Shown here: piece after piece, positions 6,529 through 38,280 of the stretch
Numbering within the stretch: the first letter of the stretch is position 1
Layout of the letters: each line of letters opens with the position of its first letter
NCBI GenBank assembly: GCA_010909165.1
Contig: MU008157.1
Coordinates: forward strand, 620,001 to 684,000
Length of the DNA stretch: 64,000 bases
Reading direction: 5' to 3'
From: Anthoceros angustus
Taxonomy: Eukaryota > Plantae > Anthocerotophyta
Notes under the pieces: generated by a model
Seen by the model: the letters and a program-made list of their open reading frames with translations, nothing else
Told to the model about the DNA's origin: nothing
Databases searched by the model: none
Position numbers and translations under genes: made by a program

Positions 6529-6666
6529 ATTACCAATCAGTGGAGCGAAAGCGGGAGCTGCGTGAGCTGGTGTATTCGACGCGAGAGAGAAGACTGTGCT
6601 TGGGCGTACATCTACCTTGCTTTACCCGGTGGTTAATTGTTATATCCGTATATCCAATGAGGGGGG

Positions 6667-6879
6667 TGTTGAATATTTAATTATTACTTATAGGGCATTG
6701 TATATACCTAGGGCACTGTTCATAACCCTAGATGAATGTTAGTTGGTTGTTGTAACCGTTTTCATGTAGCTAGGACATATTCCTTGTTCCCCTCAACCTT
6801 TTTGATATACACACACATCTTTGCCTTCGGTGTCATGGGTTGCTCAATCTGCTGTGAACCTATAAACGAAACATTAACA
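6667..6879 (+). repeat. 3' LTR of the copia element (~213 bp)
   Basis: Polypurine tract atgagggggg (6657-6666) is immediately followed by TGTT. The segment ends in AACA at 6876-6879, giving canonical TG...CA inverted termini. Confidence 0.75.
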
Positions 6880-8938
6880 ACTTGTACCATGTTATGCCTA
6901 AGCTACTTGCACCAATAGCATCCATTCCCTTTAGACACCCCATCTAAGTACCGATCCAAGCACAAGATGCTTAATAACCTGTGTCCATTTGGCCTAAGCC
7001 ATTTGGACAAGAGGAGAAGAGCTGGGCATGCTCCCTCTGCCCTGCTCCAGGGGTGGTGGTAGGAGGGGCATGTAGCGCCCGCTGTTTGGGCAAGTTGAGC
7101 AACTATTTTCGGTAATATGCCACCCAAACTTTATAATAATTTATTAATAAATATTTTTAGAAAATGCGAACACTCTGCCGAATGGTACTCCAAAGCATCC
7201 ACCACCAAATGCTACCCAGAAAGCGTCAGTTTTGTGCACGAAACAAGAGGGCTGTCTACCTACCCATATACATAGCTTTCCCATCGATACCTGATGCCCA
7301 TTAAGGCAAATACGGTCAGCAGACCCGTGCGGACGCGCAACCCGATGTACCGTGGCTTCATATCGACATACATGACATAGCAACATCAGTTTGTGGTTCC
7401 GTCGCGTACTCGGGTTTTTGCATCTGTCTGCATTTCCATGACCTTGATGATGAAAGGTTTCAAACCTCGGTTTTCAAGTCCGAGTTTCAAATCAGGTTTC
7501 AAAGCTATGCACTTCATCGCGGTGAACCGATCTAAAGCGAAGCGGTGCAGATGCGACAAGACGCTAATATGCTGCGGTCAGAGACCAGGCCTAAAACCAT
7601 GTTCACGAGAGACCATGTGGATTCACGCCTCATGTAGATCAAGACTCATAGTGAGTGCAAAACTCATCTCACGTCCTCTTGTTAGTTTTGAGAGACACGA
7701 TCATTCCTTCAATTGCGGACTCATTTGTGTTCATCTCCTTGTTGGTGTTCCTCTTCTTTGGTGAAGAAGAGGACCTCGAATGACAACACTTACATCGCTC
7801 ACATGTGATGCAATACGGACAAATTATCTCTTCTTAGGCTATGACCCTCACGTGAATGCAGTGAGCCTACCTTGTTGGACATGGGCATTTAGGAACAATC
7901 ACCGCTAGGGAGTCAGGTGAATCAACATCTTGATTTGCTGCACTATTGGCACAAGGTACAAGCATCATTACTCTTCATGTGGATTTGTGAACTTTGAAGG
8001 GACGAGGGTAACGGTTTTTGCATGGGATCCTTCTCTTCCTTGTCCCCTTTGCATCGATTTTCCAAAGACAAGCATTCACCGGAAGGGTCGACGAACAAAG
8101 TGAAAAGGCTCGGGACATGGCAAGAATAATGTCTCGATGCACACATCGACTCCGGTGTCAACTTGGGGAAGCCGCTTCTGATCCGAGTGGGGGCTGAAAT
8201 GTTGGCAGTGTCACGGAGCCGGCCTTGCCTCTTGTCGGCGATTGGCGGTGCCTCAAGGCCGTGGTAAGTGGGCAGCTGGAGGTGGTCTTCGTAATGTTTC
8301 GTTTTCTCTTTCACAAAGATTTGAGGTTAACTGGATGTCGGATGCATGAATGCAGTGCGGGCTTACGAGTGAGTGTGGCTCGCTGAAGTATGGCATGAAG
8401 CACATGCGATCCTTCACAAACATGTGCAACTCGGGTTCGGTCCCGAGAAGGTGGTGGCTGCGAAGCATGTTCGATCGACATGATCGGTGGTGGTAGGGAA
8501 TGGGCACCTCTTTCAGCGACTTTAGTGCTTAAGTTTCCTCACCGGGTTTGGAGGAGTTGTCACATAGTGCATCTTCTGCATTGAGTCAATTCTCACCTTC
8601 TAAAACCGGAAGAGTGGATTCGACCTTCTAAGGCGAGCGTAATTGACCCGATCAAAACCGAGTGCTATCTCGCTATCTCCTCGGCACCCTACAAAATGGA
8701 TTGGTCGACTTCTAAAACCAAAAGCCTATTTCATCATTCAATCCACCCTTTATCAACGCCTATGTTCCACTTCACCGTCTTTTCTTCTTACACACAACTT
8801 CCTCCAAACCAACATATCGTTTGATCTGTTCGTCCCTCATTCTCAAAAGTTTCCAACACTTGTTTCGTTGAGGTTCTTCATCTGTGCCACTAAGCTGTCC
8901 TAAATTGAGTTTGCTCCATAATGAGGCTATCCCAAAAG

Positions 8939-9483
8939 CTAAATCAACGCCAAATGCGGTATCATTTGCCATCTTTTTAGTAAAATCCAACCGTTTTCTT
9001 TTGCCATCTCCAACCGTGTCTTACATATTGGTGCCACCAAGGGGTTACTAGGCAACACAATGTGTGGAGCTTCTTGATCCTGCATCCAAAAAGCCATAGC
9101 CAAGTTGTTGGTATCACTACTTTCAGCAACATACACTCCATTTGTTCTTCCATTTTGCCTAGCTGTTGATGCACCATCCTTGTGTATGCCCAAGAGTTGT
9201 TGAACTTTCACCACATGCTTGCAGATGAAACCTTTGCTCCTCATTTGACATGAGCATGTAGCCCAAGGAGAGTAAACATGTTCAATCACATACCACAAGT
9301 TAGGGGTCGATGAAGACAAACAATGTGTAGCAACATTTTCGACATGCGGTAAAATAACTGAGCTAATAGGAATAGTTTCTGCACCCTTCATAGCTGTTTC
9401 CTCCAAAGCCTCCAGCTTCTTGTTATGCCTGTATCCCCCTTCTTTCGTGAAGTGCTGGTACCAATAATGTCGGGCAACCACAT
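8939..9483 (-). mobile_element. 3' part of a MULE-type transposase with SWIM zinc finger
   Basis: VVARHYWYQ...WATCSCQMRSKGFICKHVVKV contains the CxC-x(n)-CxH SWIM motif. Confidence 0.8.
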
Positions 9484-11419
9484 GTGGTTGCCCCACGCTT
9501 TGGTGGCACGCAGCATAGAAAAACTGGTTGTGTCATTTGGTCACATGGACAGCCTCTGTGTCACCGAAATTCAAAATTACACACGGGAAGGAACCTCCGC
9601 GGGAACATAAAAAATGTGTGCTCCCGCGTGTTTTCCTGCTCTTGTGAAGGCAAGAACCGATCGTGCATAACCAAACGCGGACTTCCTTCGCCCATTGTCC
9701 GCTATCCCGTTGATGTCATGGACACGGTGGGTCTTGCTTTGGGATGCATTCATGGCATATGTTCTTTGAATTGATGTGAAAAGCTTGGCATTCTGCGGTG
9801 TGGAGCGTACATCACGATCGGTGCAAATGCGGAGAGGAGGCGGGCGGTCGGCGCGATGCGTTGTGTGGCAAGGTTTCGGCATGGATTGTGCGGTATCGCC
9901 GATTGTGCGAGAATAGCCGACTTGTGTGATGGAAGTTTCTCAAGCTCGATTGGGGTGGTTACGCCCATGATGGCCCGCTCTCCTTGTAGTCAACGACGGT
10001 ATTGGGGTGAGAGGCGTCTGCGGAGAGGCTTTGGCGGAAGCTGCGAGCAGGCGCAAAGCGAGGAATGAACCGGTGGACATAGTAGGCACGTGCGGCATCG
10101 ACCTCCACCTCCACAAGCCGAGTGCGTGTATGCGGCGCGATGCAGCGTTATTTCAAGGTCGTTGGGGTTGATACCGCACAATCTCGCGCCGCGACCTAGC
10201 AAGGAGCTTGAGAGCAATTCTTGCGGATGACAAGTGAGTTCTCGATGCAATGTCGCCGTGAGATCTATAGTACTTTTGAAGAGCTTCCTCTGTGAAGGAC
10301 TTTCGTACTCCCAGGCCGGGAAAGATGAAGAGTTGTTCTTGTTCTCATGAGGAATATGAGCACGATGTAAGAATTTGAAGGATGTTCGGTCGGCGATCAC
10401 TGCGAGCCGAAATACGCTCTGGAATATCATTTTGTCGCCGGTCCGGATGACCATCCGATTCCCACACCGCCAAGCACATTGGTGTGAGTCGGGCGGATCC
10501 GATCTGCAGTGAAAGTGCGGGTGGGAAGGATTGTCGGGGCCAAGGTATGTGGTGCGGGTCCGGAAGGAAGCTTAGGTCGATGTGATCTCGGATGATGTGA
10601 AAAGCCGACGTGCAGTGCAGGAGCTCGCCTCGACCTTCCTCCAACACAAAGGACACCAAGCGCCTACGCACCGGACCAAACACTTTTGACCAGCACATCA
10701 TCCACTTCTTGGATACTTCACAGGTGAGATGAATATGTTGTAACTGGATTCCATGCTTGTGTTGTGAGTGCGAACCTTCATCTGTGCTAGTCCCCTCACC
10801 TTCCATGCTTGTTTGTACTTCACGGTGTGCGTTATATGTTAGCACTACCTTCCAAATTCTGTGTTTGACTCTTGGGCATGATGGTATTGGGGTCAGTAAG
10901 GGTGTTCACGTAGGCTTCTCGTAGGCATACTGGTGTTGTGATTTAGGGACCGGTGATATGGGGTGGACAGATTGGTGTTCAGCAGAAGGGCTATGTGATG
11001 CACTGTATGGCCTTGTGATGGTTTGGGCTGATTGGTGATGCTGATTCCTGCAGCCTAGTTATGTTTGGGCCGGCAAGTGCCGGGTTCCCCGGTTTGGTGT
11101 GGGGAGGACGGCGGGTGTTGTGGTTGCTGCGTGTGGGGTGGTCGCTGGGTGATTTTAGTGTGGATGATGTGCGGGACATGGTGATGTGGTGTGGCTATCT
11201 TGTTGATTGATGCGTTGGTGATGTGGATGATGGCATGGTGATAAGGTGGACGGATTGGTGATGTCATGGAGTAGGTGGAGCTTGTTTCCCTTAGTGATGT
11301 GGTGGATGTGTTGGTGTTGTGGATGATGGAATGGTGATCACATGCGGTTTGGTGATGTTTTGGAGTTGTTCCATTTTAGTTGGCATCACTTGGTGACCTC
11401 GTGTCCGTCGTTGGAAGTG

Positions 11420-13406
11420 TGTTGCACGTTTTGATATTGGCCATCCCATCGGTGATACCACCGTTCTGCAGGATGTAATGAAATCGCTGTTCGTGATGTG
11501 CTGCAATTCTACTGCGGTTGCGAGCATCGACATTTCAATTGGGCAGCGAACTTTTGAGAAATTGAAGCCGTATTTTGTGAAGAGCCTGCGAGCGGAACTT
11601 GTCCTTGCGGTATCATGTGGAAATGGCCTTTCTCAAGGGCGCTTTCAATGCTATGCGGTTGTCTTTCAAGTGTGCATCCAGGTCAATGTCGCTGTCCATG
11701 TGACATATGTGCTCCCCAAGAAGGTGACGGGCTTGTTCAAGAGTGTAGTCAGCAACACATGTGTTGTATCCGGGATGTTGTCGAAATTGCTTGTGTGCGA
11801 AGGAGGCAAGCTGGATGGCACAACCTCGCATGTTTGCGGGGCACTTGTGGCGGCGTGTGGGGCAAATTGGCCCGCCCAGTCATCGAATGATAAGCTTCCT
11901 CATCCGTCCTCGGTGGCGCCGTTTTCAATACCAAGTCGTTGGTTCGACCAAGATGGGCATGAGAAGAAGCGGATCAAACTTGTTTTCATGGAGACTCATC
12001 CATGATTTTGTCATGTACTTGAAAGAAAAATTGAAAGAGTTCATCCCGCACGATTTTTGTGCGGATGGCAAGGGTTGGAATTTCGCTGCTTGGAGTGGTT
12101 CCGATGATGTTGTCGTCTCTCATGGACTTGATCGAACTATGCGTTTGGTGTTCAAAGCGAAATTCAATCTATGCATTGGCATAATGACCGTTTCGATTTT
12201 GTCTTGGTGTTCTATAGGAGGACGGGTCCAATTGATGCAGGAACCGGCTGCTAACATCGACAAATACTATCACTTCTACATCGGTGATGATATGGTCCAC
12301 GATACCTTTGTTTAGCGCCTCATGTTGCATTGGCGGTGGATGCGTGATTCGGGTTTCCGGTGCCGGGAACATTGGTGTTGGTCCGATGGGGCAGCTAGTC
12401 AATTTAAAGCATGTAGGCCTTCTTACTTTGTTGCGGTACCTAGCTTGACTGGTGGTTGCAAGATGCTATGGTCGTTCTTTGGCGGTGGGGCATGGCAAAG
12501 GCGAACATGACGAGCAGTGCAATCTTGAAAAGGGCATTGCGGGCTGCAGAGTCCTCTCCGAATGCTCCTCGATCGCCTCTGATGTTGTCACCTACTTAAG
12601 AGAGAACATCTCACGGTGCAACAACGTCGTCTGATGGAGAGCATGTCCATAGGAGCTCCGATTGGGAAAACCGAGGTGAGCAGGAGGAACAAGTTTAATT
12701 GTGACCCAATACAGGTCAAAAAATGCATAGCATATATGGTTTCATTCTGGACCCAACTCAATGCGCATGTTGGCATGTACATCTTGTTGTCTTGATCGCA
12801 TTCTCTATGCATCGCCCATGCGAGGATCTGGAGACTCGTATCCATTAGGCCACATGGACAACCCACGGAAGGAGCCGTACTCGGAGAAGAGGCCGGGATC
12901 GAGTCTGGCGGATACCTTCGCTTGCTACTCGGGAGGAACAAGGAGCTTTGGAAAATACCGTTGATGGCCTTGACGATGATGCTGTGGAGGATGTGTCGGA
13001 CATGGCCGACCTCCTAGAAGTTGGTGATACGTTTGTTGTGCACGCTGACATCGAAGACGAGGGGCAATTGTTTTACCTTGTGCGTTGCACACAGTTGAAG
13101 CAAACCCTACTGTGTAACAAGTGGTGCCCTTGGAGCAACTCAACATTCCGAGTGGGAGAAGTGGTTGTCTGTGGCCAGTACTACACACTCCACACGACGG
13201 CGGCGTCTGTGTACACACTGGCTGAAGAGAATGAGGAGTGCACCCTTCATGCCGACTGTGTCCTAAGTTGCAAGATTGAACTGCGGGTGTACACTGATAG
13301 TGAAGGTGTGGAGTGCTATTCTTTAGAGGGGGAAGCTCTCGACAGAGTGACCACCTTGGTAAGAGAAAGCAACTCGAGCCTTGTGCTAGAAAGCACATGT
13401 GCGTAA
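11420..13406 (+). mobile_element. Degenerate DD(D/E) DNA transposase, tentatively Sola-like
   Basis: Frameshifted motifs RTFEKLKPYFV, RYHVEM, FYIGDDMVHDTFV, WCWSDGAASQFK and WSFFG..GHGKGEHD. The SDG-x3-QFK and HGKG-x2-D motifs are typical of animal/plant cut-and-paste transposases. The family assignment is from memory. Confidence 0.65.
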
Positions 13407-13819
13407 TGATTGGTCTCCCTCTATTGTACGAGGCCCACGTTTGGCAAACATAACCACGCGACCACCAAACAGCTGGTCACTAACTATTTGCTCACTAACC
13501 GTTGTCACTAACCGGTGGCGCCAGTGCACCGAAAGTTATTTTGCAAATGGGTCTTGTCCATGTTAACACGTTGATACATGGCTTCTTTAGGGGTCTGAAG
13601 GTCCAAGCGGGATGCACAGATATGCCGATTGCATTCATGCAAAACACTTATTCGTGGAATTTGCTTACAAGGGCATTTGCATTAAAAGTTGAGTTCTGGT
13701 CTCCGGGACACATGATTATCCGCCACACGTTGAAGCCCACTTTTAATTGACCGGCGTGGTGTCCACAGGCCTTGTCCTTGGTGGCACATAGTCTGGCTTT
13801 AAATGGCGTGACCTGGCGG

Positions 13820-20950: not shown

Positions 20951-21312
20951 TGAGCCACCTTCACATGTTTTTGTTGCCCTGGTGCCCTAGAATGGTCATA
21001 TTGAGAAGAAACCCAGTTTAGGTCAATATGGTTAAATAACCCTAATTTAGGAAGCTGCACCACAAAAGGTGTGTTAGTTGGTAACTCTTCTAAGTTAATA
21101 CAAGAACTCAAATCCATATTATTCTCCATAATCACATTCCCCTATCCCAAAGAGAAAAAACCATAACCCTAACCCTAATCTCAACCTTTAACCAAAATCC
21201 CTATCCCTGATCACAAGAGCGCTTCAAATCAAAGAACATGCCGCTCTAATATTATTAGTGGCGTGTAAGCGGGTAGGGACGAGCGGCTTTCTCATGTCCC
21301 GTGTTGGTGGTA

Positions 21313-22033
21313 CAGTCAAACCCCTCTAATTGGGACCCCTATAAATGGGAACCCCCTTTAAATGGGACGCCCGGGCTTACTCCCTTGAATGTGCTACATG
21401 CTAAATGGGAAACCCCTCTAATTTGTAAATGGGAACATGTCTCCCAAACATTCAATGCAAGTACACCTCTGTAAAAGGGAAAATACATATATTTTTAAAA
21501 AAAATAAAAATTGAGGAAATCGTCTTATCGAGATTACATATATTCCTATAGAAGACGAAATATGGCAAGCATGAATCCCTCCGCCTGTCAATGAGGAGGG
21601 TGAGGAGAATAATACACCGTCAATGGAGACCATAGCTCCAAGACTGCGTACGACAAAGGATGCTATAGATAATGCTATGAGGATAGCGAAGATGTTTTTG
21701 GAAGAGATGCCACATAACACTCTTGATGCTTTGAAGTTGCATTCTCAGTTGGAAAAACATATTGCTAGTCATTGGATGAAAGAACTCGGCATCAATCAAG
21801 GATTGATGATTATTTTAACCCGCAAACTAGAATTAGGTTGGCAGCTATGTAGTATGAGGGAGCATTTTGGATTTTTTGGAAGCTTTTAAGCTCTTTCGAA
21901 TTTTTGATTTAAAGATTTTTTGTTTTTTTAATATTTTTATTTTTAAAATAGATGAAAATGCCTAAACGGGAACCCCTCTAAATGGGACGATTTTTGCTAC
22001 TCCCAATTGTTCCCAATTAGAGGGGTCTGACTG
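21313..22033 (+). mobile_element. Non-autonomous pogo/Tc1-mariner-like element (MITE-sized, 721 bp)
   Basis: 23-bp TIRs cagtcaaacccctctaattggga / tcccaattagaggggtctgactg (1 mismatch), with TA on both sides. Subterminal aaatggga repeats. Residual ORF 21623..21889 resembles a transposase C-terminus. Confidence 0.85.
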
Positions 22034-22358
22034 TACTTAGCGCACGGGCGTCAAAACTTCTGGCCACTGGTTCGGATTATGCATGACTCACCATAGCATG
22101 GTGATGAGCAAGGACATACAGAGGTACATATCGTGGCCATGGAAGGCCGTGTGGACACACGTGCCGGCCTTAATGGCCATCGGGTATGCATTTGCAAGCA
22201 TATACATATGTAAGTATATGTGACAAACATATTTGTGTTTCGGATACCTAGACTGAACTATACTGAAGCTTGCACTACCTATATATGCCGGCGCTGCGAC
22301 CTACTTAGGTCCTTTTCGTAAAGAGCAGTGCCCGCTTCCTTTCCTGAGCTCGGCAGCC

Positions 22359-23697: not shown

Positions 23698-24809
23698 GTT
23701 TGTATGGTTTAGAATGGTAAACGTTTAGCATCAAATTTTGTGGAACCTGGAGGTCTCCAGGATAGGGCTCCCTTGTTTGCAAGGACTCTTTGGGGTTTCC
23801 TTGCGTGTGGGCTTATTTAGCCCTTGTTATTCATTGGTTATGTTGCATGTTGCGTCCTCGCGAGAGGCTTCGAGCCCTAAAAGTCAATGCAATGGAATTA
23901 AGGAGCTGGTTTCCCGCCAAGCCACGTCAGATGCCGAAAGCTTAATCTGCTCAAAAACTATGTCTGTCGCTTTTGGCCGGGATGTGCACCTGAAATGACC
24001 GAATTGGTTTTGTGTTGGCTGAATCTTGCTTTCAAGCTAGACAAGGGGTTGCAGTGGTCCACACTCGTTTCTAGGGTCCTTTCATTTCCAGCGGCTGGCT
24101 GCATAAAGTTCACAATTCTCACGCTTTTATTCAACTGATCTCGTTGTGGTATGAGGAAGAGCTTTTCCTCAATACATAACAAACTGCCAAGATTTTAAAA
24201 ACAGCATCCAGGAGGAAGAAACTAGTTGTTGTTCATATATGTAAGTGCATTGTTTCAATTCTCCCTATGTAGGCTCTACCAATTTAAAAGGTGGAGTAGG
24301 TATTGATAATTAACTAACATGGGCTTAACATTAACAAATGAGAGGGTAATAATTCAGAGAGAAAGGAAAATTTTGGCAATAATTTTAAATATGCTATTCA
24401 TTTTTTCTGATTTGATATGTATGCCCATGAAAAATAAGTATGTTGTTGATTTTCCCACCGTTTTTATAGGTATCTCACTCAAATTGTACACATTGCACAT
24501 AAAGAGAATAGACACCATACAATTAATGGATGACACTCCACGCCAATTACAAGGCACTGGCACTTTGAGATATGCATTTGACTTTGTAGGAATCAGACAT
24601 CAATGGCGCATAATTGCACTTTTGTATTTAGTAACATTGAAGTCTTACTCTTGAGAGCACAACACAGAGATTTATATTATGGGAAAAAGTGTTTCGTGCA
24701 TATTTGGTGGTCTTTATGCACAAAAAACCGTAATTTCTGGGTAGATTTTAGAACAAGTGGATTAACATGAGAAATATACCTTGGTAAGCACTATCATGAG
24801 ATAAACAAG

Positions 24810-27800
24810 ATGCAACACCTCAATATGGAGGTAGAAGAATCGGACATTATGGAATCTTTTTCATCCTCTAGTGCAGTGGATGATGAATTTATCTCCGAAA
24901 ATGAACCCACAAACAAGAATAAATTCATGAATTCCTACAATGGATTGTATATAGTTGATGCATCCATAATAGATGATCCACCATTTGTCAGTCCAATGTC
25001 TAGCTTCATATCCACTACTTCGTATTTGCGAAGTCGTAAAGCCCAAGGAATAAAGCTGGTACTAGGAGATATATCCATAGATCCATACTCAAAAAGACCA
25101 GATCCCGTTAACTCCATGGGGATGAACAAAGAAGATAGAGAGACCACCTCGGAGGACTCTTGGGAGAACACACCATTTATGAACGAAAGTGGTGATGATG
25201 CAAATGCAGAGGGAAACACACCATTTGTTAGTGAGAATGGTGAAGTCATAGAGGACGGATGGTCCTTCAATAATCGTATTGACAAGGGAAAAGGAATATT
25301 AGAAGATTATGAATATCCTCCTACATTTGAGGTGGGATCCAGTAGTGAGCCTTATTTTAGGGGTAACTATGGTAGTCTTCAAAATTTTGGGTTTGATGGA
25401 AATACCATCATAGATACCTTGACCACTGGACATGGAGTTGATGAGCTTGATAACCATGCATTTTTTTCTAAAGCTAGTTCAAACCATCTCGAGGAAGTAA
25501 ATGTCGATCCCCAAAGTCAGCCAAAAAATTTGGAAGCTTTTGAAAGAGATTTTAAAGCACTTGAAAGTGGTAATTATGGAGATATAATTGAACATGATGA
25601 AGACGAAGAGTTTGACATAAGCCAATTAGATGTTCAGCCACGGAGAGGAAGTATATTTGACCAGGAAAATGCAAATTTCTATGATAGAGGTCCCGTTTAT
25701 TATCCATATGGACCTAAGCCTCAAAATTCTCATGTATGATAATGTTTAAATGTCTTCATGTTGATATATTTTTAAACCCTTAGTACATATTCATAAGAAT
25801 CTAACTAATTAACTACCTACAACCAACAAAAGTACTACTATTATGAATTAACTTTTTTTTTTTACTCTACAAAAATAAATAGGTACAAGGTGCAACATCA
25901 AATCAAGCTGAAGGCAAAGGGTAAATTTATTTATTTATTTTGATATTTTTAGTGTTTACTAATGTCTCATACATTTATTGACTTGAAAAAACAATGATAT
26001 TTGAACGTGCAGTGACAATAGAACTGAAAATCAAGGTCCCAAAGGTCATGTAACTCTGGCAGATTTACGAAGAGCATCTTCTCTTGGGGCTTTACAATCA
26101 ACTATAGAGATTGCAATGTCGTACCATGGAGTAGCAATTTCATATGAAGGATTTGCAAAAAGTCATTTTGCAAACCATTATAAAGGCTTTTGGCCTTTTC
26201 GGACTATTCTACCTATCAATCAAGTTGTGCAATACACAAAGGTATAATACATTGTTGTTTAAAGAGTTTTTGGATTGAATCTTTCTTTTTTAAAATATTC
26301 ATGGATGTGAGTTCTTTTTCTCATTGTATGTATGCTTGATGTTATAGGATTTTCTCAAGAATCCGCTGCTACAAGTGTTGAAGACTTCTGCACTAAAACA
26401 TTGTGCTATAACTGTGTTTGCACGTAATTTCAGCCTGTAACCAGCAATCCTTCCTTCTCATATGTTTTAGTACTTCATATTTTTAACTTATTGATAGTCA
26501 ATTCATTAAAAACTATAAATAAATTATAATACCAATAAATATCAACTTTGGTATCTAAAAGATACTTCATTGCAATAGATATTATGGTTTATATGGGTGA
26601 TACTCCATCTAAGTATCCAAGTGTGGAGCATCTTCAACAAGTTTTATTATTAGGAATCAAGTATCGAAATCTAAGAGACGAAATTTTCTGTCAATTATGT
26701 AAACAAACAACAAGAAACCCTTCAAGGTACAATAAACAACTTAACCATCCTTTTAGCATTTGAGATGTTTATTTGTACCATGTTATTCATCATCAATCCT
26801 TCCAATGTAGTTCCACCAAACGGGGTGTACGGGGTTTCGTATATTGCTATGTTTAATGCTCAAAATGGCCTCAACCATTGTTATATTTAATGCTCAAAAT
26901 CGCCTCAACCAGGTCAAGCAATGTGAAAGGCTGGCAAGCAATGGCAGTTTGTGTGGGGACTTTTACACCCTCAAAAACTTTTCAACCTTTTCTAGAATCT
27001 CATTTTGAACAGGTTAATAATTCATATGTGCTGTAAATAGATTATTAAAAAATATTCTATTTAAAAAATAATTTCATAAAAACATAAACTATTACTTGAT
27101 AGGTAGCTCAAGGAACTGTGGAAGGGACTTATGACGAAGAAGCTGCTCAACCGACTTCATCAGAGATACAAGCAGCAGCTGCTGAACCGTTACAACCTGA
27201 GAAATCCGTGGATCCAATGACAGGATCTTTTAATGCTCCTGAAGCTGCTGCCTATTGTTTGGCTCGCTTACGTAAACTTAGTCGCATTGGTCCACGATTG
27301 TTAGTTCCTGGCGCACCTGAGATACAAGCAGTTGAGGTACAATATTAATAATAGAAACAAATTCATAAAAGATATTTGGACAGTATAACGTGTTGTGCAA
27401 TTTAAGAGATCACGTGTCATAAAATTTTCCCAAAAACAATTTTTTTTCAAATGTCAACCAAAATACTAAGTGGATCTTTCTTAATAAATCATGAAAGCTG
27501 TTTACAGAATATGGAGACTGTCATTCTACACATATATCTACCTAATGGGACATATCAGGTATCCATCATTTATGCGTGTTTTCCTAGTTCTAAAAGTTAC
27601 CAAAACCAAAGTTTATTTTTCAAAACCAATATGTTATATTGCATGTATCCTTCATCCAAGTAGGTATCAACATGGGTTTGATTGGAACCAAAAAGTGTCA
27701 TTGCAGGAAATGATGCTCGATCCTTCTTCTATAGTTGAAGAAGTGACTATGGAACTTGTGGAACACCTTGGACTATCCAATGTAAAATATTATGGAATTT

Positions 27801-29632
27801 TTGAAGATTGGGATGGAGGTATGTTTAAATATTTTTAATATAATTTTTAGAAGTAGCTTACACACCATAGTAATTAAGAATAAAAATAATCTATTTTTAC
27901 AGTACAAAAGCTTCTTGCAAAAAGGGCATTCATAATGGAAGCACATAGTGGAAAATTAATCCAAGAGCGTCCTTTCAAGAAAGGTCTCATGGGAAGGATG
28001 AAGGAAGGCATCTTAAGCATTGCAAAAGCAACTGGCTATAGAGGAGATGGTTTACAGAAGGCTTTAGAGGCCGATGTTCTTGGTAGTCTTAAAAAAAAGA
28101 TAGTTGAATTAGCAGTAAAAAATGATTTCAAAGAATATCTACCAAAACGATTCTTAAATAATTTAGAAGATTCTGAAACGCAACCAACACCACTTGATCT
28201 CTATAGAAAAAATAGTATTCCTGATCAGATACAATTGACAATTAAACCAAGTCACAATGGATCATCAAGATTTCTATTTAAGAGGAAGCTATTTATCAAT
28301 GAGTTGGCAGATTGGCCACAGAGTGTGAGAGATGAAGTGGCTGCATTTGATTACACTCAGGTAAGGATTTTTGTTTATTACGTTGTTTAATTTTATAATT
28401 ACATCTAAAAACTCAAAAATTATAATAAAATAATACTTTATATTACTATGTAGGCAGTACACGATGTGGTGACTGGTGTCTATCCTATGCCAGAAAGTGA
28501 TGCATTGATGCTGGCTGCATTACAATTGCGAACGGATTCGGTTTTTCATCAAATGTCTTCGGACCTTCTTGAGTAAGTTTTTTTTTGTTTGTTGAAGCTT
28601 GCATGATTTATATTTATAAATTCTTGAAAAAATCAACTCAAACTATATCCTGATTTGTGCTTTATGTTAACAGCAGTGTAGATGTTCAAAAATACGGGCC
28701 CATAGAATATGTGTCAAATAACGAGGCTGAATGGCGAGAAGCAATTTTGAAAACTTATGATGCCCTTCCACTCACAAACGACTTGGCTATTTGTAAAAGT
28801 GATTACCTTAAGTACTTACAATCTCGATGTCCACTCTATGGATCAACTTGGTTTTATGTTCAAGTAAGCTATTGTTACAACTAGTGTTTTCAGATACAAA
28901 AACTTGATCTTTTTTTCAAGATAAAAAGGTTACTTGTAATTTATTACAACTAGTGTTTTGAGATAGAAGTTTACTTTTTCTCAAGATTGATAAGTTACTC
29001 ATAATTTATTTTCTTTGCCTGTTCTTACCAGCAAAAAGTTGATCCACGTTTGCCTAGCGAGTTGTTTATAGCTGTAAATGCATTAGGTGTATCTTTTGTT
29101 CAAGTTGAATCAAAGGCAAGTGCATTTGTTTAAAAATAATTATTCAATTAATAATATATAATATACTTGAAAACATTAATATGATCAATTTGATCATAAA
29201 TTTCTACATGATACCCAGGAACCACTACTTTATATGCGATTTACAGAAATATGTAGTTGGGGTCATTCACCTGCTTCTTTCTCCCTTGTCACTGGAAACA
29301 TGTAGGCACTCTTATTCACTCAAAAAGTGATTTTTTATTGAGTGGCTGATGAATAGCACGAGGATTATTCATCATAGGAGTTATGTACTTATTCACTTGG
29401 AATTATTGAATATAGACTTTGACTAAGTTATTATTTGTGGTATTTTGCAGGACATATAATCAAGATCATCGGTTCCTGACAACACAAGTAGATATTATTC
29501 TCATTTATTTACATATTTTTTATAATTTAATTTTATAATTTTGGTTGAAATTAAAATATATGATGTGATATCTTGCAGGGGGCAGAAATTGGAAATATAA
29601 TTCACTTGTATGTGAATCAGTTGCAGCATTGA
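24810..29632 (+). CDS. Multi-exon MyTH4-FERM domain protein with an acidic N-terminus and no motor domain
   Basis: MyTH4 motifs IMVYMGD, LRDEIFCQLCKQTTRNPS, WQAMAVCVGTFTPS and SRIGPRLLVPGAPEIQA. FERM motifs HIYLPNG, FLFKRKLF, DVVTGVYP..DALMLAALQL, YLKYLQ..PLYGSTWFYV and LFIAVNALGV..ICSWG. The GT-AG junctions checked by hand from 25733 to 27020 keep the frame. Stop TGA at 29630-29632. Confidence 0.85.
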
Positions 29633-30099
29633 CTCCTATTGTTGATGTATTGTTGTAGTATAATATGGTAGGATTGATATCCATTTGTCATGAATTTGTA
29701 GAATATATTGGTTGTAAGGTATTTTTGTACCATATTTCCTTAGTTATCGGGCAATTGTACATTAGTTATGAGATAATAATCAAAATTGATACGAACACGA
29801 GTATTGGCACTTTTGCAAGTGTATATTATCTTGTGATAAGTTTTTTTCAATATAGGCATCCTTATTTATGTAAATACCAATTATTTTTATTTTAGGTACG
29901 ATTATGTAAGTAATCATTAATTTATATTATTATCTAATAATATTTTTGATTAATGATCAGATATAAAAATTTATTAGTTATAGGTAGGTATATGACATCT
30001 ATATGATCCTACAGTAACAACAAAATCTTTGAATGATAAGTTCGTATGCTTCCTTGATATATAAGGCTTCTATAAAAGAATGAAGACATTAAGATGCTC

Positions 30100-31400
30100 G
30101 AACTAGGTAGGGAAAACGCATTATACGAACAGAAGGATGTCTACAACATCTTGAGGATAGAGGAGCCCAAGCAGACCCATAAAGAGCATCCCATAATATT
30201 ACCTAAGCTATACATAATGAAGAAGGAAACATTCCACCTTCCTAATCCACGCTTGCACAAAGTCTAGGGCACAAGAATGAGATCCCTAGCCCATTCCATC
30301 TTGCTAACAAGGAATAGTGATGCAGCAACAAAGTCTAAAAGCTGCGCCCATGTTCCTTGCTGAAATATCTTTAGTTCCTTTAAAGTTTGAGTACCTAACA
30401 AAAACTTCCTACATATCATGCTACTATCGAGAGTCCACTTCTGGGAAGGCAATAAGATCCGTTCAAAACCCTCTCCATTATCTTCAGCCACTTCTCCTGC
30501 ACCACTAAGATAATATTTTGAAATGATTCAAGTAAAAGATTTATGAAAAAATCAATAAGTACTTAAACCTATCCAATTGCCAGTTAAACATACAATATCT
30601 ATGTACACTTGTCTTTATTCTTAATTCCATACTAAAAAAGGCGTAACATGGTAGCTGAAAACTGCTTCATACCTACATAGTCTAAGTCATCTTTAGATCC
30701 AGTGGTAAGTAGGCCCTTCCTTATTCTGATTACGATACCTTGGGGGCAGTTCATAGTTTGAGAGTAAACAATCGTGGGCTAATCCCTTCTGAAGACCTGG
30801 GGTCCTTTACAGGGTTCTTCCCCACTCCCTCGGTGTAGATGGCACTTCCATCTCTACTAATCTGTAAAGTCTTCGTTCCCTAATCATAGTCTAAGTAAGA
30901 GAAGGCCACCCATCCTATTGCTAACCATAATTAGATAAGCATATGGATTTGGACAACGTCCCCACTCCCTCGGTGTAGATGGCACTTCCATCTCTGCTAA
31001 TCTGTAAAGTCTCCGTTCCCTAATCATAGTCTAAGTAAGAGAAGGCCACCCATCCTATTGCTAACCATAATTAGATAAGCATATGGATTTGGACAACGTC
31101 GGTTTCTTTGGGATTTCTTAAACTCGGTTTTTTTAGGGATTAGCCATGGCTATTCCACAGCCAGTATGGCACGTCTTTCAACTGCTCTAACTAGGCAAAG
31201 TACCGAGATCTGGATCTGGGATGCGTCAGTCTTCAGTAGATATGTGGTTTCTCAGGGCTGATTTTGGGCAAATTTTTATCAACTTCAACTTCTCACATGA
31301 CTCTAAGTATACATTTATGACAAAAACAAAGCGGGTTTGGGGGAAGTTTCAACAAATTCCCACGATGATCGGACACGAGGGGTCTAACGAGTTTTACGGC
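30100..31400 (-). mobile_element. Highly degraded LINE (L1-like) remnant
   Basis: MEWARDLILV followed by a frameshifted LDF-like segment resembles the L1 RT motif MEWA..(x)..LDFxKAYD. Otherwise riddled with stops. Confidence 0.4.
30821..31100. repeat. 140-bp tandem duplication (2 mismatches)
   Basis: cccactccctcggtgtagat...ggacaacgtc at 30821-30960 and 30961-31100. Confidence 0.95.
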
Positions 31401-36132: not shown

Positions 36133-38280
36133 TCAGGTTTCCTCACCGGCCCCGAACCAGCCCCATACTCCTGCTGACTGCTTTTGTGCTCTTCCTTGCC
36201 CTGCAGCAGCCTCATCAGCAGCCTTTTGGCGTCGTAGCAAATCCAATTCACTATCCAGACTTTCTGATGCCCGCAATGCCTGACTTAAGTCCACCTCAAG
36301 CTTGAAACATCTTGTTTGCTCCGCTGCCAGTTCAGAGCGGACAGAGATGAGCTGCTCCTTGTATTCCGAAGCTTCGGTTAGTGCATCTGCTAGTTCTTTC
36401 TTCAACTTGCTGATCTCTGCTCGTGCTGCCAGAAGCTCTTCCTCCTCCGCCAGCTGCTTTGCTTTGGCCTCGCGCTCTTGCTGTTTAACATTCTCCTTGG
36501 GTGCTGCAGCTGGATCTGTGAAAGTGGGCAACATAGAGTTCAAATTCTTAGCAGCAGAGGCAGCAGAGGCAGCAGCTGCTGCTGCTGATGGAGATTTGAT
36601 TAGCTTGGGTTTCACCCTGGCGGGCTGGATGGTCTTGAGCACATGGACATCGCTGGAGAAGCGGCCATTGTAGCCTCCAAAGGCTACAAGAAACACAGCA
36701 TCCCCCTCAGAGACAGCCACCACACTTAGTCCTTCACTGGCTAGCGTTGACACTGGCTCCACTTTGGATTCCAGAGACCAAACCAGAGTAGCCATGTTCA
36801 GGACCACAGTCTCAGGTATGCCACACTTGTTGTCTCCACCGCCAATAATATACCAGTTTTCACCTACTACAAGACCAGCATGTCCGGCTCGAGCTGTTGG
36901 CACAAACCCTGGAGTTTGAGCCTCTGACCACTCCAGAGTCTGCAAATCCAAGACATGTAAGTCGTTAAAGCATCTGGAGTGAGAACTACCCCCAAACACC
37001 AGAAGATAACGATCTGCCCACAGTGCAGCAGTGTGCCCTGAACGCGGAGACGGAGGGGTTCCCAAGGTGTCCGTCATATCCCATGTCATTGTCTCCAAAT
37101 CCAGGATGCACAGGTCATTCAGCAACCTCCTCTTCGAATCCTCTCCTCCGAACATCACCAGAGTAGAGTCCACTCTGGTGACTGACTGACCGCCTCTGGG
37201 AGCAGGAGCCGATCCATAGGCTCGAAGAAGCGACCACGACTGCGTGAACAGGTCAAAAGAATGCACAAGCACATTTTCTGACGTGCTTTTGGAATGGCCA
37301 GCCACAGAGAGGAGCCTGCCACCGTCTCGCACCAACGAATGGCCAGCGCAAGGTGGCAGCCAGTCCTGCGCATCTGCCAAAGAGGACAGGGAAGCAGTAG
37401 AGCGCTTGTTATCCAGCTTGGTCCATTTCAAATTGTTGAGATCCAGCACCTGCACGTCATTCAGAAACCGACCACTGTGATTGCCACCTACCACAAACAA
37501 CTTGTCATCAACCACTGCTGCCGCATGCTGATACCGTCCCGGCGGCCGGTAACCGCTGACAGGCACGGCGATCCACTCATTCAAAACTGCCAGCGCCTGA
37601 ATGTCGGCCCCTACGCCGCTCTTGTGACGCGATTTTCTTGGACTCCCGGTGAAGAAACCGCTGCCATTAGCCACCGCCTCGGCGTGCAGACCTGAGTCAG
37701 GATCCGCCTGATCCACACCTTGCCCCGCTGTTCTTTCGCCGGACCAGCTCCCCACCAAGACCGGGCCATCGGAGAAGCCATCTGCTTCTTTCTCCAGTCG
37801 ATGCCGCTGCTGCTGCGTGGCGGATGAGGAGAAAGAGTCGGACACCGGCGATCCCGGGAGCTCCAATTGGCGACCGAGATCCAACGGCCCCGGCAGGTGC
37901 TGCTCCGCCTTGAGGTACCAGTCCGCATCCTCCTCCTCCAGCGTGCGCACAAAGAGCCGCATGGCCTCCACGGACGACGTCTCCCTCAGATGCTGCCAGC
38001 TCGTCCACTTAGCCTGCTCCAGCAAGTTCCACACTTTCGGCTTGGGATCCTTGCACGGCCCGAGCGTCGCCTGCTGGTACAGCGAGTAGAGCAGCAGCCT
38101 GGTCTCCTCCTTGAACGCAGGCGAGGAGCGGGTTGTCGGCTGCTGATCTCCCAACCCCGCGTACGCCGCTGCTGCAAAGAAGCGGTCCGGATACGGCAAG
38201 CTCTGCAACTGCGAGCGCGTTCGAGCGAGCGGCGGCGCCGGCTTGCGCGCGATCGGCTCCGCGGCGTCCCCGTCCGCCAT
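36133..38280 (-). CDS. ACBP4: Acyl-CoA-binding domain + kelch repeat protein (class IV ACBP), intronless
   Basis: YPDRFFAAAAYAG and LLLYSLYQQATLGPC (ACB domain), kelch repeats (RYQHAAAVVD, PRGGQSVT, PRSGHTAA), and a C-terminal coiled coil. Confidence 0.95.
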   Translation of the reverse strand: MADGDAAEPIARKPAPPLARTRSQLQSLPYPDRFFAAAAYAGLGDQQPTTRSSPAFKEETRLLLYSLYQQATLGPCKDPKPKVWNLLEQAKWTSWQHLRETSSVEAMRLFVRTLEEEDADWYLKAEQHLPGPLDLGRQLELPGSPVSDSFSSSATQQQRHRLEKEADGFSDGPVLVGSWSGERTAGQGVDQADPDSGLHAEAVANGSGFFTGSPRKSRHKSGVGADIQALAVLNEWIAVPVSGYRPPGRYQHAAAVVDDKLFVVGGNHSGRFLNDVQVLDLNNLKWTKLDNKRSTASLSSLADAQDWLPPCAGHSLVRDGGRLLSVAGHSKSTSENVLVHSFDLFTQSWSLLRAYGSAPAPRGGQSVTRVDSTLVMFGGEDSKRRLLNDLCILDLETMTWDMTDTLGTPPSPRSGHTAALWADRYLLVFGGSSHSRCFNDLHVLDLQTLEWSEAQTPGFVPTARAGHAGLVVGENWYIIGGGDNKCGIPETVVLNMATLVWSLESKVEPVSTLASEGLSVVAVSEGDAVFLVAFGGYNGRFSSDVHVLKTIQPARVKPKLIKSPSAAAAAASAASAAKNLNSMLPTFTDPAAAPKENVKQQEREAKAKQLAEEEELLAARAEISKLKKELADALTEASEYKEQLISVRSELAAEQTRCFKLEVDLSQALRASESLDSELDLLRRQKAADEAAAGQGRAQKQSAGVWGWFGAGEET

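What the first reader, a model, noticed from the sequence alone, without database searches (positions are those of the whole stretch)
24810..29632. Stand-alone, motor-less MyTH4-FERM gene in a land-plant genome
Seen: an apparently intact gene of roughly 15 exons (frame conserved across the junctions checked). It has a ~310-aa acidic N-terminus, a MyTH4 domain, a FERM domain with a ~100-aa insertion in F1, and a stop right after F3. No kinesin or myosin motor lies at either end. Known: the characterised land-plant MyTH4-FERM protein is KCBP/ZWICHEL, fused to a C-terminal kinesin. The IMxYMGD and LRDEIxCQLCKQT motifs look closer to myosin VII/X/XV-type tails than to KCBP as I recall it. Inference: an undescribed microtubule-actin/membrane linker, either an ancestral gene retained in plants with flagellate sperm or a horizontal acquisition.
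Basis: partly seen in the sequence, partly recalled or inferred. Interest (0 to 1): 0.8.

Follow-up and report, generated by a model that had tools for sequence, protein, structure and literature searches.

The report
Motor-less MyTH4-FERM gene of plants
This plant carries an intact gene for a cytoskeleton-linker module (MyTH4-FERM) with no motor attached; it belongs to an old, unstudied gene family that liverworts, a lycophyte, a fern and two streptophyte algae also have, although papers say plants carry this module only in the kinesin KCBP.

Summary
Window 24810-29632 (+) is an intact 16-exon gene encoding 978 aa. It has an acidic, unconserved N-terminus (about 330-345 aa), a MyTH4 domain, a FERM domain with a 105-aa insert in F1, and a stop right after F3. 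No kinesin or myosin motor motif occurs anywhere in the 64 kb.

It is not foreign DNA. Thirteen of its 15 introns share position and phase with orthologues in Marchantia and/or Selaginella. In ML trees it falls in a clade (100/99) with uncharacterised 'hypothetical' proteins of Marchantia, Riccia, Selaginella, Ceratopteris, Chara and Mesostigma, branching roughly as the species do. A related species holds a 90-95% identical copy, and the differences indicate purifying selection on the MyTH4-FERM part.

None of the 121 significant hits of an exhaustive search has kinesin motifs, while at least 13 have myosin motor motifs. That argues against a truncated KCBP copy, but no KCBP sequence could be obtained for a direct tree.

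The gene lies in a 30-35% GC island with ~50% GC flanks. Earlier notes describe many such gene islands in this genome, so this looks like a genome habit.

Function and expression are untested. The likeliest role is a microtubule-to-membrane/actin adaptor, perhaps in flagellate sperm. I found no paper describing the family.

The parts
24810..25733 (+). Exon 1 (aa 1-308): start codon and the acidic, low-complexity N-terminal region
   Evidence: ORF; model. No Pfam domain. pI 4.3. Fast-evolving against organism C: 4 synonymous and 8 non-synonymous differences, no indels.
25883..25920 (+). Exon 2 (38 nt, aa 309-321): linker
   Evidence: Keeps the frame with AG/GT sites. Selaginella has a 41-nt exon at the matching place in the gene, but the alignment does not place the two at the same position. 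This is the least certain exon.
26013..26241 (+). Exon 3 (aa 321-397): N-terminal helices of the MyTH4 domain
   Evidence: Its 3' intron has the same position and phase in Marchantia and Selaginella. It aligns to family members.
26348..26423 (+). Exon 4 (76 nt, aa 398-423): ends ...AITVFA-H
   Evidence: The donor GTGTTTGCAC|GTAATT is identical in Marchantia and Selaginella. Selaginella's exon is also 76 nt.
26579..26726 (+). Exon 5 (148 nt, aa 423-472): MyTH4 core with the IMVYMGD and LRDEIFCQLCKQTT motifs
   Evidence: Pfam MyTH4 38.8 bits. The acceptor ttgcaatag|AT restores ...H-IMVYMGD as in all orthologues. Marchantia's exon is also 148 nt.
26913..27012 (+). Exon 6 (100 nt, aa 472-505): MyTH4 (GWQAMAVCVGTF)
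   Evidence: Pfam MyTH4 32 bits. The exon is 100 nt in all three species.
27103..27336 (+). Exon 7 (aa 506-583): a lineage-specific acidic/Ala-rich loop (about aa 510-546), then the end of MyTH4
   Evidence: Pfam MyTH4 positions 74-105. The exon is 153 nt in the orthologues, so the window has 81 extra nt.
27508..27558 (+). Exon 8 (51 nt, aa 584-600): start of FERM lobe F1
   Evidence: The exon is 51 nt in all three species.
27707..27818 (+). Exon 9 (112 nt, aa 601-638): F1 (RA/ubiquitin-like)
   Evidence: Pfam RA_2 20 bits and FERM_N 13.8 bits. The exon is 112 nt in Selaginella and 115 nt in Marchantia.
27903..28360 (+). Exon 10 (aa 638-790): the 105-aa F1 insert (27953-28267), the last F1 strand (RFLFKRKLF) and the start of F2
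   Evidence: The insert varies in length across the family and is poorly ordered in the fern model. The part covered by organism C is mostly synonymous: 7 synonymous and 1 non-synonymous difference.
28454..28572 (+). Exon 11 (119 nt, aa 791-830): F2
   Evidence: Pfam FERM_M 19.3 bits. The exon is 119 nt in Selaginella.
28674..28863 (+). Exon 12 (190 nt, aa 830-893): end of F2
   Evidence: Pfam FERM_M 16.1 bits. The exon is 190 nt in all three species.
29032..29115 (+). Exon 13 (84 nt, aa 894-921): start of F3; followed by a GC-AG intron (AAG|GCAAGT)
   Evidence: The exon is 84 nt in all three species.
29219..29301 (+). Exon 14 (83 nt, aa 922-949): F3
   Evidence: The exon is 83 nt in all three species.
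29451..29487 (+). Exon 15 (37 nt, aa 949-961): F3
   Evidence: The exon is 37 nt in all three species. One contig of run X1 lacks 2 nt at 29476. This is probably noise, because X1 contigs carry about 1% single-base gaps throughout.
29579..29632 (+). Exon 16 (54 nt, aa 962-978 plus stop): C-terminal helix of F3, then TGA
   Evidence: The exon is 54 nt in Selaginella and 51 nt in Marchantia, and all three proteins stop here.
24000..30300 (.). AT-rich island (30-35% GC) that holds the gene, with ~50% GC flanks
   Evidence: Gene GC3 is 0.275 against 0.50-0.75 in the neighbours; introns are 25% GC; CpG observed/expected is 0.45 against 0.65-0.77 in the flanks. No terminal repeats bound the island. 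One DNA contig of organism A spans 23900-24663 at unchanged depth.
26412..26455 (+). Nucleotide-level conserved element across the exon 4/intron 4 donor
   Evidence: The last 12 exon nt are identical and about 30 intron nt are alignable among the window, Marchantia and Selaginella. A second donor-like motif lies about 20 nt downstream. Its role is unknown.

Best explanation
The gene is a vertically inherited member of an ancient streptophyte family of motor-less MyTH4-FERM proteins. The family has not been characterised. Its annotated members are Marchantia Mp4g21760, Riccia R1sor_014862 and R1flu_015344, Selaginella SELMODRAFT_414494/415350, Ceratopteris KP509_04G017100, Chara CBR_g11025 and Mesostigma Mv03231.

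Shown here:
- The gene is intact.
- Its exon-intron structure is shared with liverwort and lycophyte orthologues.
- Its MyTH4-FERM part is under purifying selection.
- The fern orthologue folds as a complete MyTH4-FERM cassette like those of myosins VII and X.
- It has no motor.

Inferred from what such cassettes do in myosins VII/X and KCBP:
- The protein acts as a passive adaptor.
- The mostly basic MyTH4 domain would bind microtubules.
- The FERM lobes would bind the cytoplasmic tail of a membrane protein, lipid or actin.
- The fast-evolving acidic N-terminus and the variable F1 insert would be regulatory or spacer regions.

More speculative: every named relative found so far comes from a streptophyte with flagellate cells, and the Marchantia orthologue is nearly silent in thalli. 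A role in the microtubule arrays of the spermatozoid or zoid (spline, multilayered structure, flagellar apparatus) is therefore the most attractive setting. This is a hypothesis and has not been shown.
For: Gene model and domains.

No motor in the 64 kb; ordinary plant neighbours (RPS3A, PPR-E, ACBP4-like kelch, pyruvate kinase).

Relatives: the exhaustive search and the naming of hits. The family profile separates members (at least 650 bits) from all other proteins (at most 357 bits).

Introns: 12 of 15 shared position and phase in the first mapping. A 13th followed once the exon 4/5 junction was corrected. Exon sizes from the MyTH4 core onward are 100/./51/112/./119/190/84/83/37/54, identical or nearly so in the orthologues.

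Trees: the family clade has SH-aLRT 99 and UFBoot/SH-aLRT 100/99. The order is Mesostigma, Chara, liverworts, then Selaginella with the fern and the window protein (99/96).

Selection against organism C: in the MyTH4-FERM part 10 synonymous and 4 non-synonymous differences; intron 10 has 12 differences in 93 nt against 8 in about 190 nt of the adjoining exon.

Fold: the fern orthologue's MyTH4-FERM region has pLDDT 89 and pTM 0.87. The top PDB matches are the Myo7a/b, DdMyo7 and Myo10 cassettes. By sequence, the Marchantia orthologue matches Myo7b MF2 at E = 1e-32.

Charge: MyTH4 has pI 8.3-9.7 in six of seven family members; the N-terminus has pI 4.3-4.8 in five of seven.

Expression of the orthologue: Mp4g21760 is at 0.2-0.6 TPM in far-red-treated thalli (PMC13190419, supplement 5).
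Against: - No RNA evidence for this gene. The one putative RNA run of the same organism laid nothing, and the 'RNA?' run of organism C carries introns.
- No binding partner, localisation or phenotype is known for any family member.
- The sperm link rests only on a distribution drawn from a few genomes. The search library holds one representative per 50%-identity cluster, and the word searches were insensitive. Absence from mosses, hornworts or seed plants is therefore not established.
- The MyTH4 domain of the fern member is not basic (pI 6.2).
- No KCBP sequence could be obtained, so the relation of this family to KCBP's tail has not been tested by a tree.
- The structure was predicted for the fern orthologue (about 47-50% identical), not for the window protein.
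Confidence: 0.6

Rival explanations
1. The gene came by horizontal transfer from an AT-rich donor such as an amoebozoan, oomycete or fungus, or the segment is assembly contamination. This would explain the 30-35% GC island in a ~50% GC region.
For: Strong compositional contrast: GC3 0.275 against 0.50-0.75 in the neighbours, and introns at 25% GC. The nearest non-plant relatives are unnamed microbial eukaryote proteins and amoebozoan myosin tails.
Against: - Thirteen of 15 introns share position and phase with Marchantia and/or Selaginella.
- The gene tree follows the streptophyte species tree with 100/99 support.
- One organism-A contig crosses the 5' GC boundary at unchanged depth, and organism C holds the gene together with homologous upstream sequence.
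- No terminal repeats or target-site duplication bound the island.
- Earlier notes, unchecked, report 29 AT-rich islands with ordinary plant genes in this genome.
- The Marchantia and Selaginella orthologues are not AT-shifted.
Confidence: 0.02
2. The gene is a truncated paralogue of KCBP, the kinesin-14 with an N-terminal MyTH4-FERM, that lost its motor.
For: KCBP is the only MyTH4-FERM protein described in plants (PMC1434745, PMC4574192). No KCBP sequence was available here for a direct tree, so a deep sister relation cannot be excluded.
Against: - In an exhaustive phmmer scan of 1.84 billion representatives with the MyTH4 core, none of the 121 hits at E <= 1e-3 carries kinesin motifs, while at least 13 carry myosin motor motifs. 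A KCBP-derived copy should hit the many plant KCBPs first.
- The family reaches back to Mesostigma and Chara and is always motor-less, with the stop right after F3.
- No kinesin-bearing cluster appears among the nearest Atlas neighbours (a lead only).
Confidence: 0.05
3. The gene is a silent relic or young pseudogene that still looks intact.
For: - No transcript evidence.
- AT-rich, CpG-poor composition.
- One contig of run X1 lacks 2 nt inside exon 15.
- The Marchantia orthologue is nearly silent in thalli.
Against: - Sixteen exons are in frame, with canonical splice sites and orthologue-identical exon lengths.
- The MyTH4-FERM part shows 10 synonymous and 4 conservative non-synonymous differences against organism C, and exons are about three times better conserved than intron 10.
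- X1 contigs carry about 1% single-base gaps everywhere, so the 2-nt gap is likely noise.
Confidence: 0.06
4. It is a real microtubule/membrane adaptor, but it works in ordinary vegetative or dividing cells (cortical arrays, phragmoplast, tip growth), with no special link to flagellate gametes.
For: KCBP's MyTH4-FERM acts on cortical microtubules and actin in vegetative cells (PMC4574192). The apparent restriction to flagellate-sperm lineages may be a sampling artefact of the searches.
Against: No angiosperm or gymnosperm protein appears among the significant hits of the exhaustive search, although those proteomes are heavily represented. Mp4g21760 is at or below 0.6 TPM in thalli. Neither point is decisive.
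Confidence: 0.25

Closest known systems
Uncharacterised streptophyte proteins: Marchantia polymorpha Mp4g21760 (MARPO_0090s0045), Riccia R1sor_014862 and R1flu_015344, Selaginella SELMODRAFT_414494/415350, Ceratopteris KP509_04G017100, Chara CBR_g11025, Mesostigma Mv03231
   Same: - Same architecture: a variable N-terminus, MyTH4, F1 with an insert, F2, a PTB-like F3, then the stop; no motor.
- 31-47% identity over the MyTH4-FERM region.
- Shared intron positions.
- One clade with 100/99 support.
   Different: - The N-terminus is longer than in liverworts and Selaginella (344 aa against 115-208) and shorter than in the fern (676 aa), with no sequence similarity to any of them.
- The F1 insert is longer (F1 is 192 aa against 140-176 aa in the land-plant orthologues).
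- There are 27 extra residues in a MyTH4 loop.
- Only this copy is strongly AT-shifted.
- None of these proteins has been studied. RefSeq auto-names Selaginella fragments 'unconventional myosin-VIIa' and 'myosin-I heavy chain'.
MyTH4-FERM cassettes of myosins VII, X and XV and of Dictyostelium myosin VII (PDB 5XBF, 5MV9, 5EJR, 5EJY, 3PVL, 3AU4, 3PZD)
   Same: Same two-domain supramodule by sequence (E down to 1e-32 for the Marchantia orthologue) and by fold (target-normalised TM 0.6-0.78 for the fern orthologue). The MyTH4 core motifs are the same.
   Different: No myosin head, IQ, SH3 or PH domains. A single cassette only. About 17-25% identity. A large insert in F1.
KCBP/ZWICHEL (kinesin-14 with an N-terminal MyTH4-FERM)
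   Same: It is a plant protein with one MyTH4-FERM cassette. In KCBP the MyTH4 domain binds microtubules and the FERM domain binds F-actin (PMC4574192). That is the working model borrowed here.
   Different: No kinesin motor, coiled coil or calmodulin-binding helix. KCBPs are absent from the 121 significant hits of the exhaustive search, whereas myosin tails are present. A direct tree was not possible.
Short motor-less (WW-)MyTH4-FERM proteins of unidentified microbial eukaryotes (P0016, P0115, P0043, P0038, P0096); an Atlas lead points to an Oomycota-rich cluster
   Same: They are the sister group in both trees (99 and 97/96). They are motor-less, 500-680 aa long, and end right after F3.
   Different: About 25-30% identity. 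A compact F1 without the insert. Some have three N-terminal WW domains. They appear intron-less on short contigs. The organisms are not known.
Animal PLEKHH1/2/3 (MAX-1): motor-less PH-MyTH4-FERM proteins
   Same: Motor-less proteins built around one MyTH4-FERM cassette, so the same general idea of a passive adaptor.
   Different: No PH domains are found here. No specific relationship is seen in the trees or hit lists. The comparison rests partly on my own knowledge of PLEKHH architecture.

Membership tests
MyTH4-FERM cassette proteins (general) | A MyTH4 domain (Pfam PF00784) | tested here: met
   Exons 5 and 6 each pass the 27-bit gathering score on their own (38.8 and 32.0 bits). Exon 7 supplies profile positions 74-105.
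MyTH4-FERM cassette proteins (general) | A three-lobed FERM (F1 ubiquitin/RA-like, F2 FERM_M, F3 PTB/PH-like) directly after MyTH4 | tested here: met
   Exon-wise Pfam hits to RA_2/FERM_N and FERM_M fall below the cut-off because the pieces are single exons. The full model aligns end to end with orthologues that pass for MyTH4, RA_2, FERM_M and IRS-type PTB.
MyTH4-FERM cassette proteins (general) | MyTH4 and FERM packed as one supramodule, as in the solved myosin VII/X tails | tested here: inconclusive
   Met for the fern orthologue (pLDDT 89, pTM 0.87; full-length Foldseek matches to Myo7, DdMyo7 and Myo10 cassettes). The spliced window protein itself could not be handed to the predictor by reference.
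MyTH4-FERM myosins (classes VII, X, XV, XXII, XXV) | A myosin motor head N-terminal to the cassette | tested here: not met
   No GESGAGKT, NxSRFGK or DIxGFE motif in any frame of the 64 kb. No Pfam domain in the 308-aa first exon. An RPS3A-like gene lies 1.2 kb upstream.
KCBP (kinesin-14 with MyTH4-FERM) | A C-terminal kinesin motor and a calmodulin-binding helix after the cassette | tested here: not met
   The stop falls at the end of F3. No SSRSH, LAGSE or kinesin P-loop motif anywhere in the window. The next gene downstream is a PPR gene on the opposite strand.
KCBP (kinesin-14 with MyTH4-FERM) | The cassette is most closely related to KCBP cassettes | tested here: inconclusive
   Indirect evidence only. 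No protein with kinesin motifs is among the 121 exhaustive-search hits, while myosins are. No KCBP sequence was available for a tree.
Streptophyte motor-less MyTH4-FERM family (Mp4g21760-like; unnamed) | Falls within the clade of these proteins in a tree with outgroups | tested here: met
   Clade support is 99 and 100/99. The window protein groups with Ceratopteris and Selaginella at 99/96.
Streptophyte motor-less MyTH4-FERM family (Mp4g21760-like; unnamed) | Shared exon-intron structure | tested here: met
   Thirteen of 15 introns have the same alignment column and phase as in Marchantia and/or Selaginella. Eight of the eleven exons from exon 6 onward have the same length as in Selaginella.
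Streptophyte motor-less MyTH4-FERM family (Mp4g21760-like; unnamed) | No motor, an insert in F1, and a stop right after F3 | tested here: met
PLEKHH/MAX-1 type motor-less MyTH4-FERM proteins | PH domains N-terminal to MyTH4 | tested here: not met
   No PH hit in exon 1 or exon 3 at E <= 1.

The most novel reading that the evidence does not exclude
This family is a dedicated part of the streptophyte flagellate-cell cytoskeleton. It would link the spline, multilayered-structure or basal-apparatus microtubules to the plasma membrane, and would have been lost together with flagella in most seed plants. It may also represent the free-standing ancestor from which KCBP's MyTH4-FERM tail was recruited onto a kinesin-14.
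Probability: 0.25. Interest if true: 0.75.

Novelty: new variant of a known kind. Interest (0 to 1): 0.55.

Why it matters
Papers on plant cytoskeleton state that the MyTH4-FERM tandem occurs in plants only in the kinesin KCBP, and outside plants only in myosins (PMC1434745, PMC4574192). This work shows a second, motor-less MyTH4-FERM lineage. It is conserved from Mesostigma and Chara through liverworts, a lycophyte and a fern to this plant, it keeps its ancient intron positions, and its cassette is under purifying selection.

That gives plant cell biology a new candidate microtubule-membrane/actin adaptor. A ready genetic model exists in Marchantia Mp4g21760. It also opens two testable questions. 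First, is this protein part of the little-known machinery that shapes plant spermatozoids? Second, where did KCBP's tail come from?

The result also shows that an AT-rich island in this genome is not in itself a sign of foreign DNA.

Tried and rejected
1. First gene model. Exon 4 ending at 26436 and exon 5 starting at 26562 keeps the frame but inserts 10 residues that no orthologue has. I rejected it for 26423/26579 after comparing the orthologue junctions. The exhaustive search therefore used a query whose first six residues are intronic. The alignments began after them, so the result stands.

2. Word-index protein searches. All three were insensitive. They added only the two Riccia proteins, and the alignment query did not even recover Marchantia. 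They cannot be used to claim absence.

3. KCBP sequences. None could be obtained by any permitted route: no hit in any search, PDB holds only the motor, and I did not type sequences from memory.

4. RNA evidence. Both run searches and the single read-laying run (6,000 letters) gave DNA-like contigs only.

5. Expression of the Marchantia orthologue. Supplements of PMC6174852, PMC6418429, PMC6290024 and 10.1101/2021.07.25.453666 do not list it, and 10.1101/2020.04.06.027821 has no supplement text held. Only PMC13190419 lists it, for thalli.

6. Competing-profile classification of fragments. The outgroup profile had only two sequences, so I replaced it with a best-hit comparison.

7. Mobile-element origin of the island. 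No flanking direct or inverted repeats were found.

8. CpG decay as the cause of AT-richness. It is suggestive (0.45 against 0.65-0.77) but not decisive, because one PPR gene also has 0.47.

9. Hairpin at the conserved intron-4 donor. It is weak (-5.5 kcal/mol) and rests on three sequences, so it remains a side note.

Full report
**Observation**

The region 24810-29632 (+) holds an intact gene. I assembled it from open frames and canonical splice sites and corrected one junction by comparison with orthologues.

The final model has 16 exons, a 2937-nt CDS and 978 aa, with 14 GT-AG introns and one GC-AG intron. Exon coordinates are listed under parts.

Pfam finds MyTH4 in exons 5-7. Exons 5 and 6 each pass the gathering score alone. 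RA_2/FERM_N and FERM_M pieces appear in exons 9, 11 and 12.

- The N-terminal ~344 aa have no domain and are acidic (pI 4.3).
- F1 carries a 105-aa insert, residues 655-759.
- The stop follows the last F3 helix.
- No kinesin or myosin motor motif exists in any frame of the 64 kb.
- The neighbours are ordinary land-plant genes: an RPS3A-like gene upstream, then PPR-E, an ACBP4-like kelch protein and pyruvate kinase downstream.

**Is the DNA native?**

The gene sits in a 30-35% GC island with ~50% GC flanks. Its GC3 is 0.275 against 0.50-0.75 in every neighbouring gene, and its introns are 25% GC. That raised the possibility of transfer or contamination. Three results argue against it.

1. A DNA run of the same organism crosses the 5' GC boundary in a single contig at unchanged depth. 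A second organism (C) holds a 90-95% identical copy, including upstream sequence.
2. No repeats bound the island.
3. Earlier notes of this scan, unchecked, describe 29 AT-rich islands carrying ordinary plant genes in this genome. The Marchantia and Selaginella orthologues are not AT-shifted.

CpG is more depleted in the island than in the flanks (0.45 against 0.65-0.77). This fits methylation-driven decay but is not decisive.

**Relatives**

I ran an exhaustive phmmer scan of 1.84 billion cluster representatives with the MyTH4 core exon. It gave only 121 hits at E <= 1e-3, and none was more than 57% identical over most of the exon.

I compared the full model with these hits and looked up their sources. 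The best full-length relatives are motor-less 'hypothetical' proteins:

- Marchantia polymorpha Mp4g21760
- Selaginella moellendorffii SELMODRAFT_414494
- Ceratopteris richardii KP509_04G017100
- Mesostigma viride Mv03231
- Chara braunii CBR_g11025

Riccia sorocarpa and R. fluitans were added. All have MyTH4, an RA-like F1, FERM_M and a PTB-like F3. None has a motor or an N-terminal domain. A family profile separates members (at least 650 bits) from everything else (at most 357 bits). Identity to the window protein over the cassette is 46.7% for the fern, 40.5% for Selaginella, 39.9% for Marchantia and 31% for Mesostigma.

A metagenome contig (L003) carries a further member that groups with Chara. 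A few unnamed exon-sized fragments look family-like too.

**Vertical descent**

I mapped the exact exon structures of the Marchantia and Selaginella genes and projected the introns onto the protein alignment.

Twelve window introns share column and phase with an orthologue. The corrected exon 4/5 junction adds a thirteenth.

From the MyTH4 core onward the exon lengths (nt) are:

| Gene | Exon lengths |
|---|---|
| Window | 148/100/234/51/112/458/119/190/84/83/37/54 |
| Selaginella | 319/100/153/51/112/398/119/190/84/83/37/54 |
| Marchantia | 148/100/153/51/115/299/113/190/84/83/37/51 |

ML trees of 66 and 31 MyTH4-FERM units give the family 99 and 100/99 support. Its internal order follows the species tree: Mesostigma; Chara with L003; the liverworts; then Selaginella with the window protein and Ceratopteris (99/96). 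Horizontal acquisition is therefore rejected.

The sister group (97/96) is five short motor-less (WW-)MyTH4-FERM proteins from unnamed microbial eukaryotes. An Atlas lead points to an Oomycota-rich cluster. Amoebozoan myosin VII-type tails come next.

**KCBP**

None of the 121 significant hits carries kinesin motifs, while at least 13 carry myosin motor motifs. PDB sequence matches are to myosin VII, Dictyostelium myosin VII and myosin X cassettes.

A recent KCBP-derived copy should have hit the many plant KCBPs first, so that rival is unlikely. I could not obtain a KCBP sequence by any permitted route, so a deep sister relation remains untested.

**Is it functional?**

One search listed the differences between the window and organism C. 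Classified against the model, the MyTH4-FERM part shows 10 synonymous and 4 conservative non-synonymous changes. The N-terminus shows 4 and 8. Intron 10 has 12 changes in 93 nt against 8 in about 190 nt of the adjoining exon. This is the pattern of a constrained cassette with a fast-evolving tail.

No spliced RNA was seen. The only putative RNA run of the organism laid nothing, and the 'RNA?' run of organism C contains introns. One X1 contig lacks 2 nt in exon 15, but X1 contigs carry about 1% single-base gaps throughout, so I regard this as noise.

**Structure**

The spliced window protein could not be passed to the predictor by reference. I folded the closest orthologue's cassette (Ceratopteris 684-1251) with a 46-row alignment that included the window's exons. 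The result was pLDDT 89 and pTM 0.87, and only the F1 insert was poorly ordered. Foldseek matches complete MyTH4-FERM cassettes of Myo7a/b, DdMyo7 and Myo10 (target-normalised TM 0.6-0.78).

**Mechanism (inferred)**

By analogy with myosin VII/X and KCBP tails, the MyTH4 domain (pI 8.3-9.7 in six of seven members) would bind microtubules. The FERM lobes would bind a membrane-protein tail, lipid or actin. Without a motor, the protein would act as a passive linker or scaffold. The acidic N-terminus (pI 4.3-4.8 in five of seven members, unconserved in sequence) and the variable F1 insert may regulate it.

All named members come from streptophytes with flagellate cells. Mp4g21760 is at 0.2-0.6 TPM in thalli (PMC13190419, supplement 5). 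Earlier notes mention HAP2, a dynein docking-complex gene and kinesin-2 in this genome (leads only). A role in spermatozoid microtubule arrays is attractive but unproven. The searches used cannot establish absence from mosses, hornworts or seed plants.

**Literature**

No searchable paper mentions any of the orthologue identifiers, or pairs MyTH4 with bryophyte, lycophyte, fern or streptophyte-alga terms.

- PMC1434745 states that in Arabidopsis MyTH4 and band 4.1 occur only in one kinesin.
- PMC4574192 states that the tandem otherwise occurs only in myosins outside plants.
- A screen for spermatozoid-specific plant genes excluded families with similarity to animal proteins, so it would have dropped this one.
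- The 2026 Selaginella myosin survey does not mention these proteins.

**Verdict**

This is a real, intact, vertically inherited gene. It is a new member of an unnamed, uncharacterised streptophyte family of motor-less MyTH4-FERM proteins, which is a new variant of a known kind. Interest is moderate. It corrects a textbook-level statement about plants and offers a tractable candidate, but function and expression are still open.

Noticed in passing
window 26412-26455; L001 ~8004-8046; L002 ~7021-7064: The exon 4/intron 4 donor region is conserved at nucleotide level between the window, Marchantia and Selaginella. The last 12 exon nt are identical, synonymous sites included, and about 30 intron nt align with one 1-nt gap. 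Window-Selaginella identity at intron nt 7-24 is 12/18, against 1-8/18 in 12 control introns. A second donor-like GTAAT (GCAAT in the window) lies about 20 nt downstream, and its use would shift the frame. RNAalifold gives only a weak hairpin. It may be a splicing-control element.
   Followed up: partly
window 36133-38280 (-) and 52997-54583 (+): The ACBP4-like kelch gene (715 aa) and the pyruvate kinase gene (528 aa) are single uninterrupted ORFs with GC3 0.60-0.75. The neighbouring MyTH4-FERM gene has 15 introns and GC3 0.275. This genome seems to hold two very different classes of gene.
   Followed up: no
window 28872-28968 (intron 12): A 28-nt direct repeat spaced 69 nt apart. Both runs of organism C skip 70 nt here (28904-28975), so one repeat unit differs between the two species.
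   Followed up: no
window 26843-26910 (intron 5): A tandem duplication of a 34-nt unit (91% identical), ending just before the acceptor of exon 6.
   Followed up: no
window 21310-22036: A MITE-like pair of 26-nt inverted repeats (96% complementary, 675 nt apart) in an AT-rich patch upstream of the RPS3A-like gene. It contains several copies of an AACCCCTCTAAxTGGGA motif.
   Followed up: no
window 30819-31098: Two tandem copies of a 140-nt unit (99% identical) downstream of the gene.
   Followed up: no
L003 (JGI metagenome contig, 15.1 kb, 52% GC), about 6400-13750: It carries another member of the family that groups with Chara in the tree. Introns 4 and 13 are absent, and a plant-type LpxB fragment lies nearby. 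It probably comes from a charophyte-like alga in an environmental sample.
   Followed up: partly
Proteins P0125 and P0126 (Selaginella RefSeq XP_024535724.1, XP_024534856.1): RefSeq's automatic names 'unconventional myosin-VIIa' and 'myosin-I heavy chain' are attached to motor-less fragments of this family. The names are misleading, because the proteins have no myosin head.
   Followed up: partly
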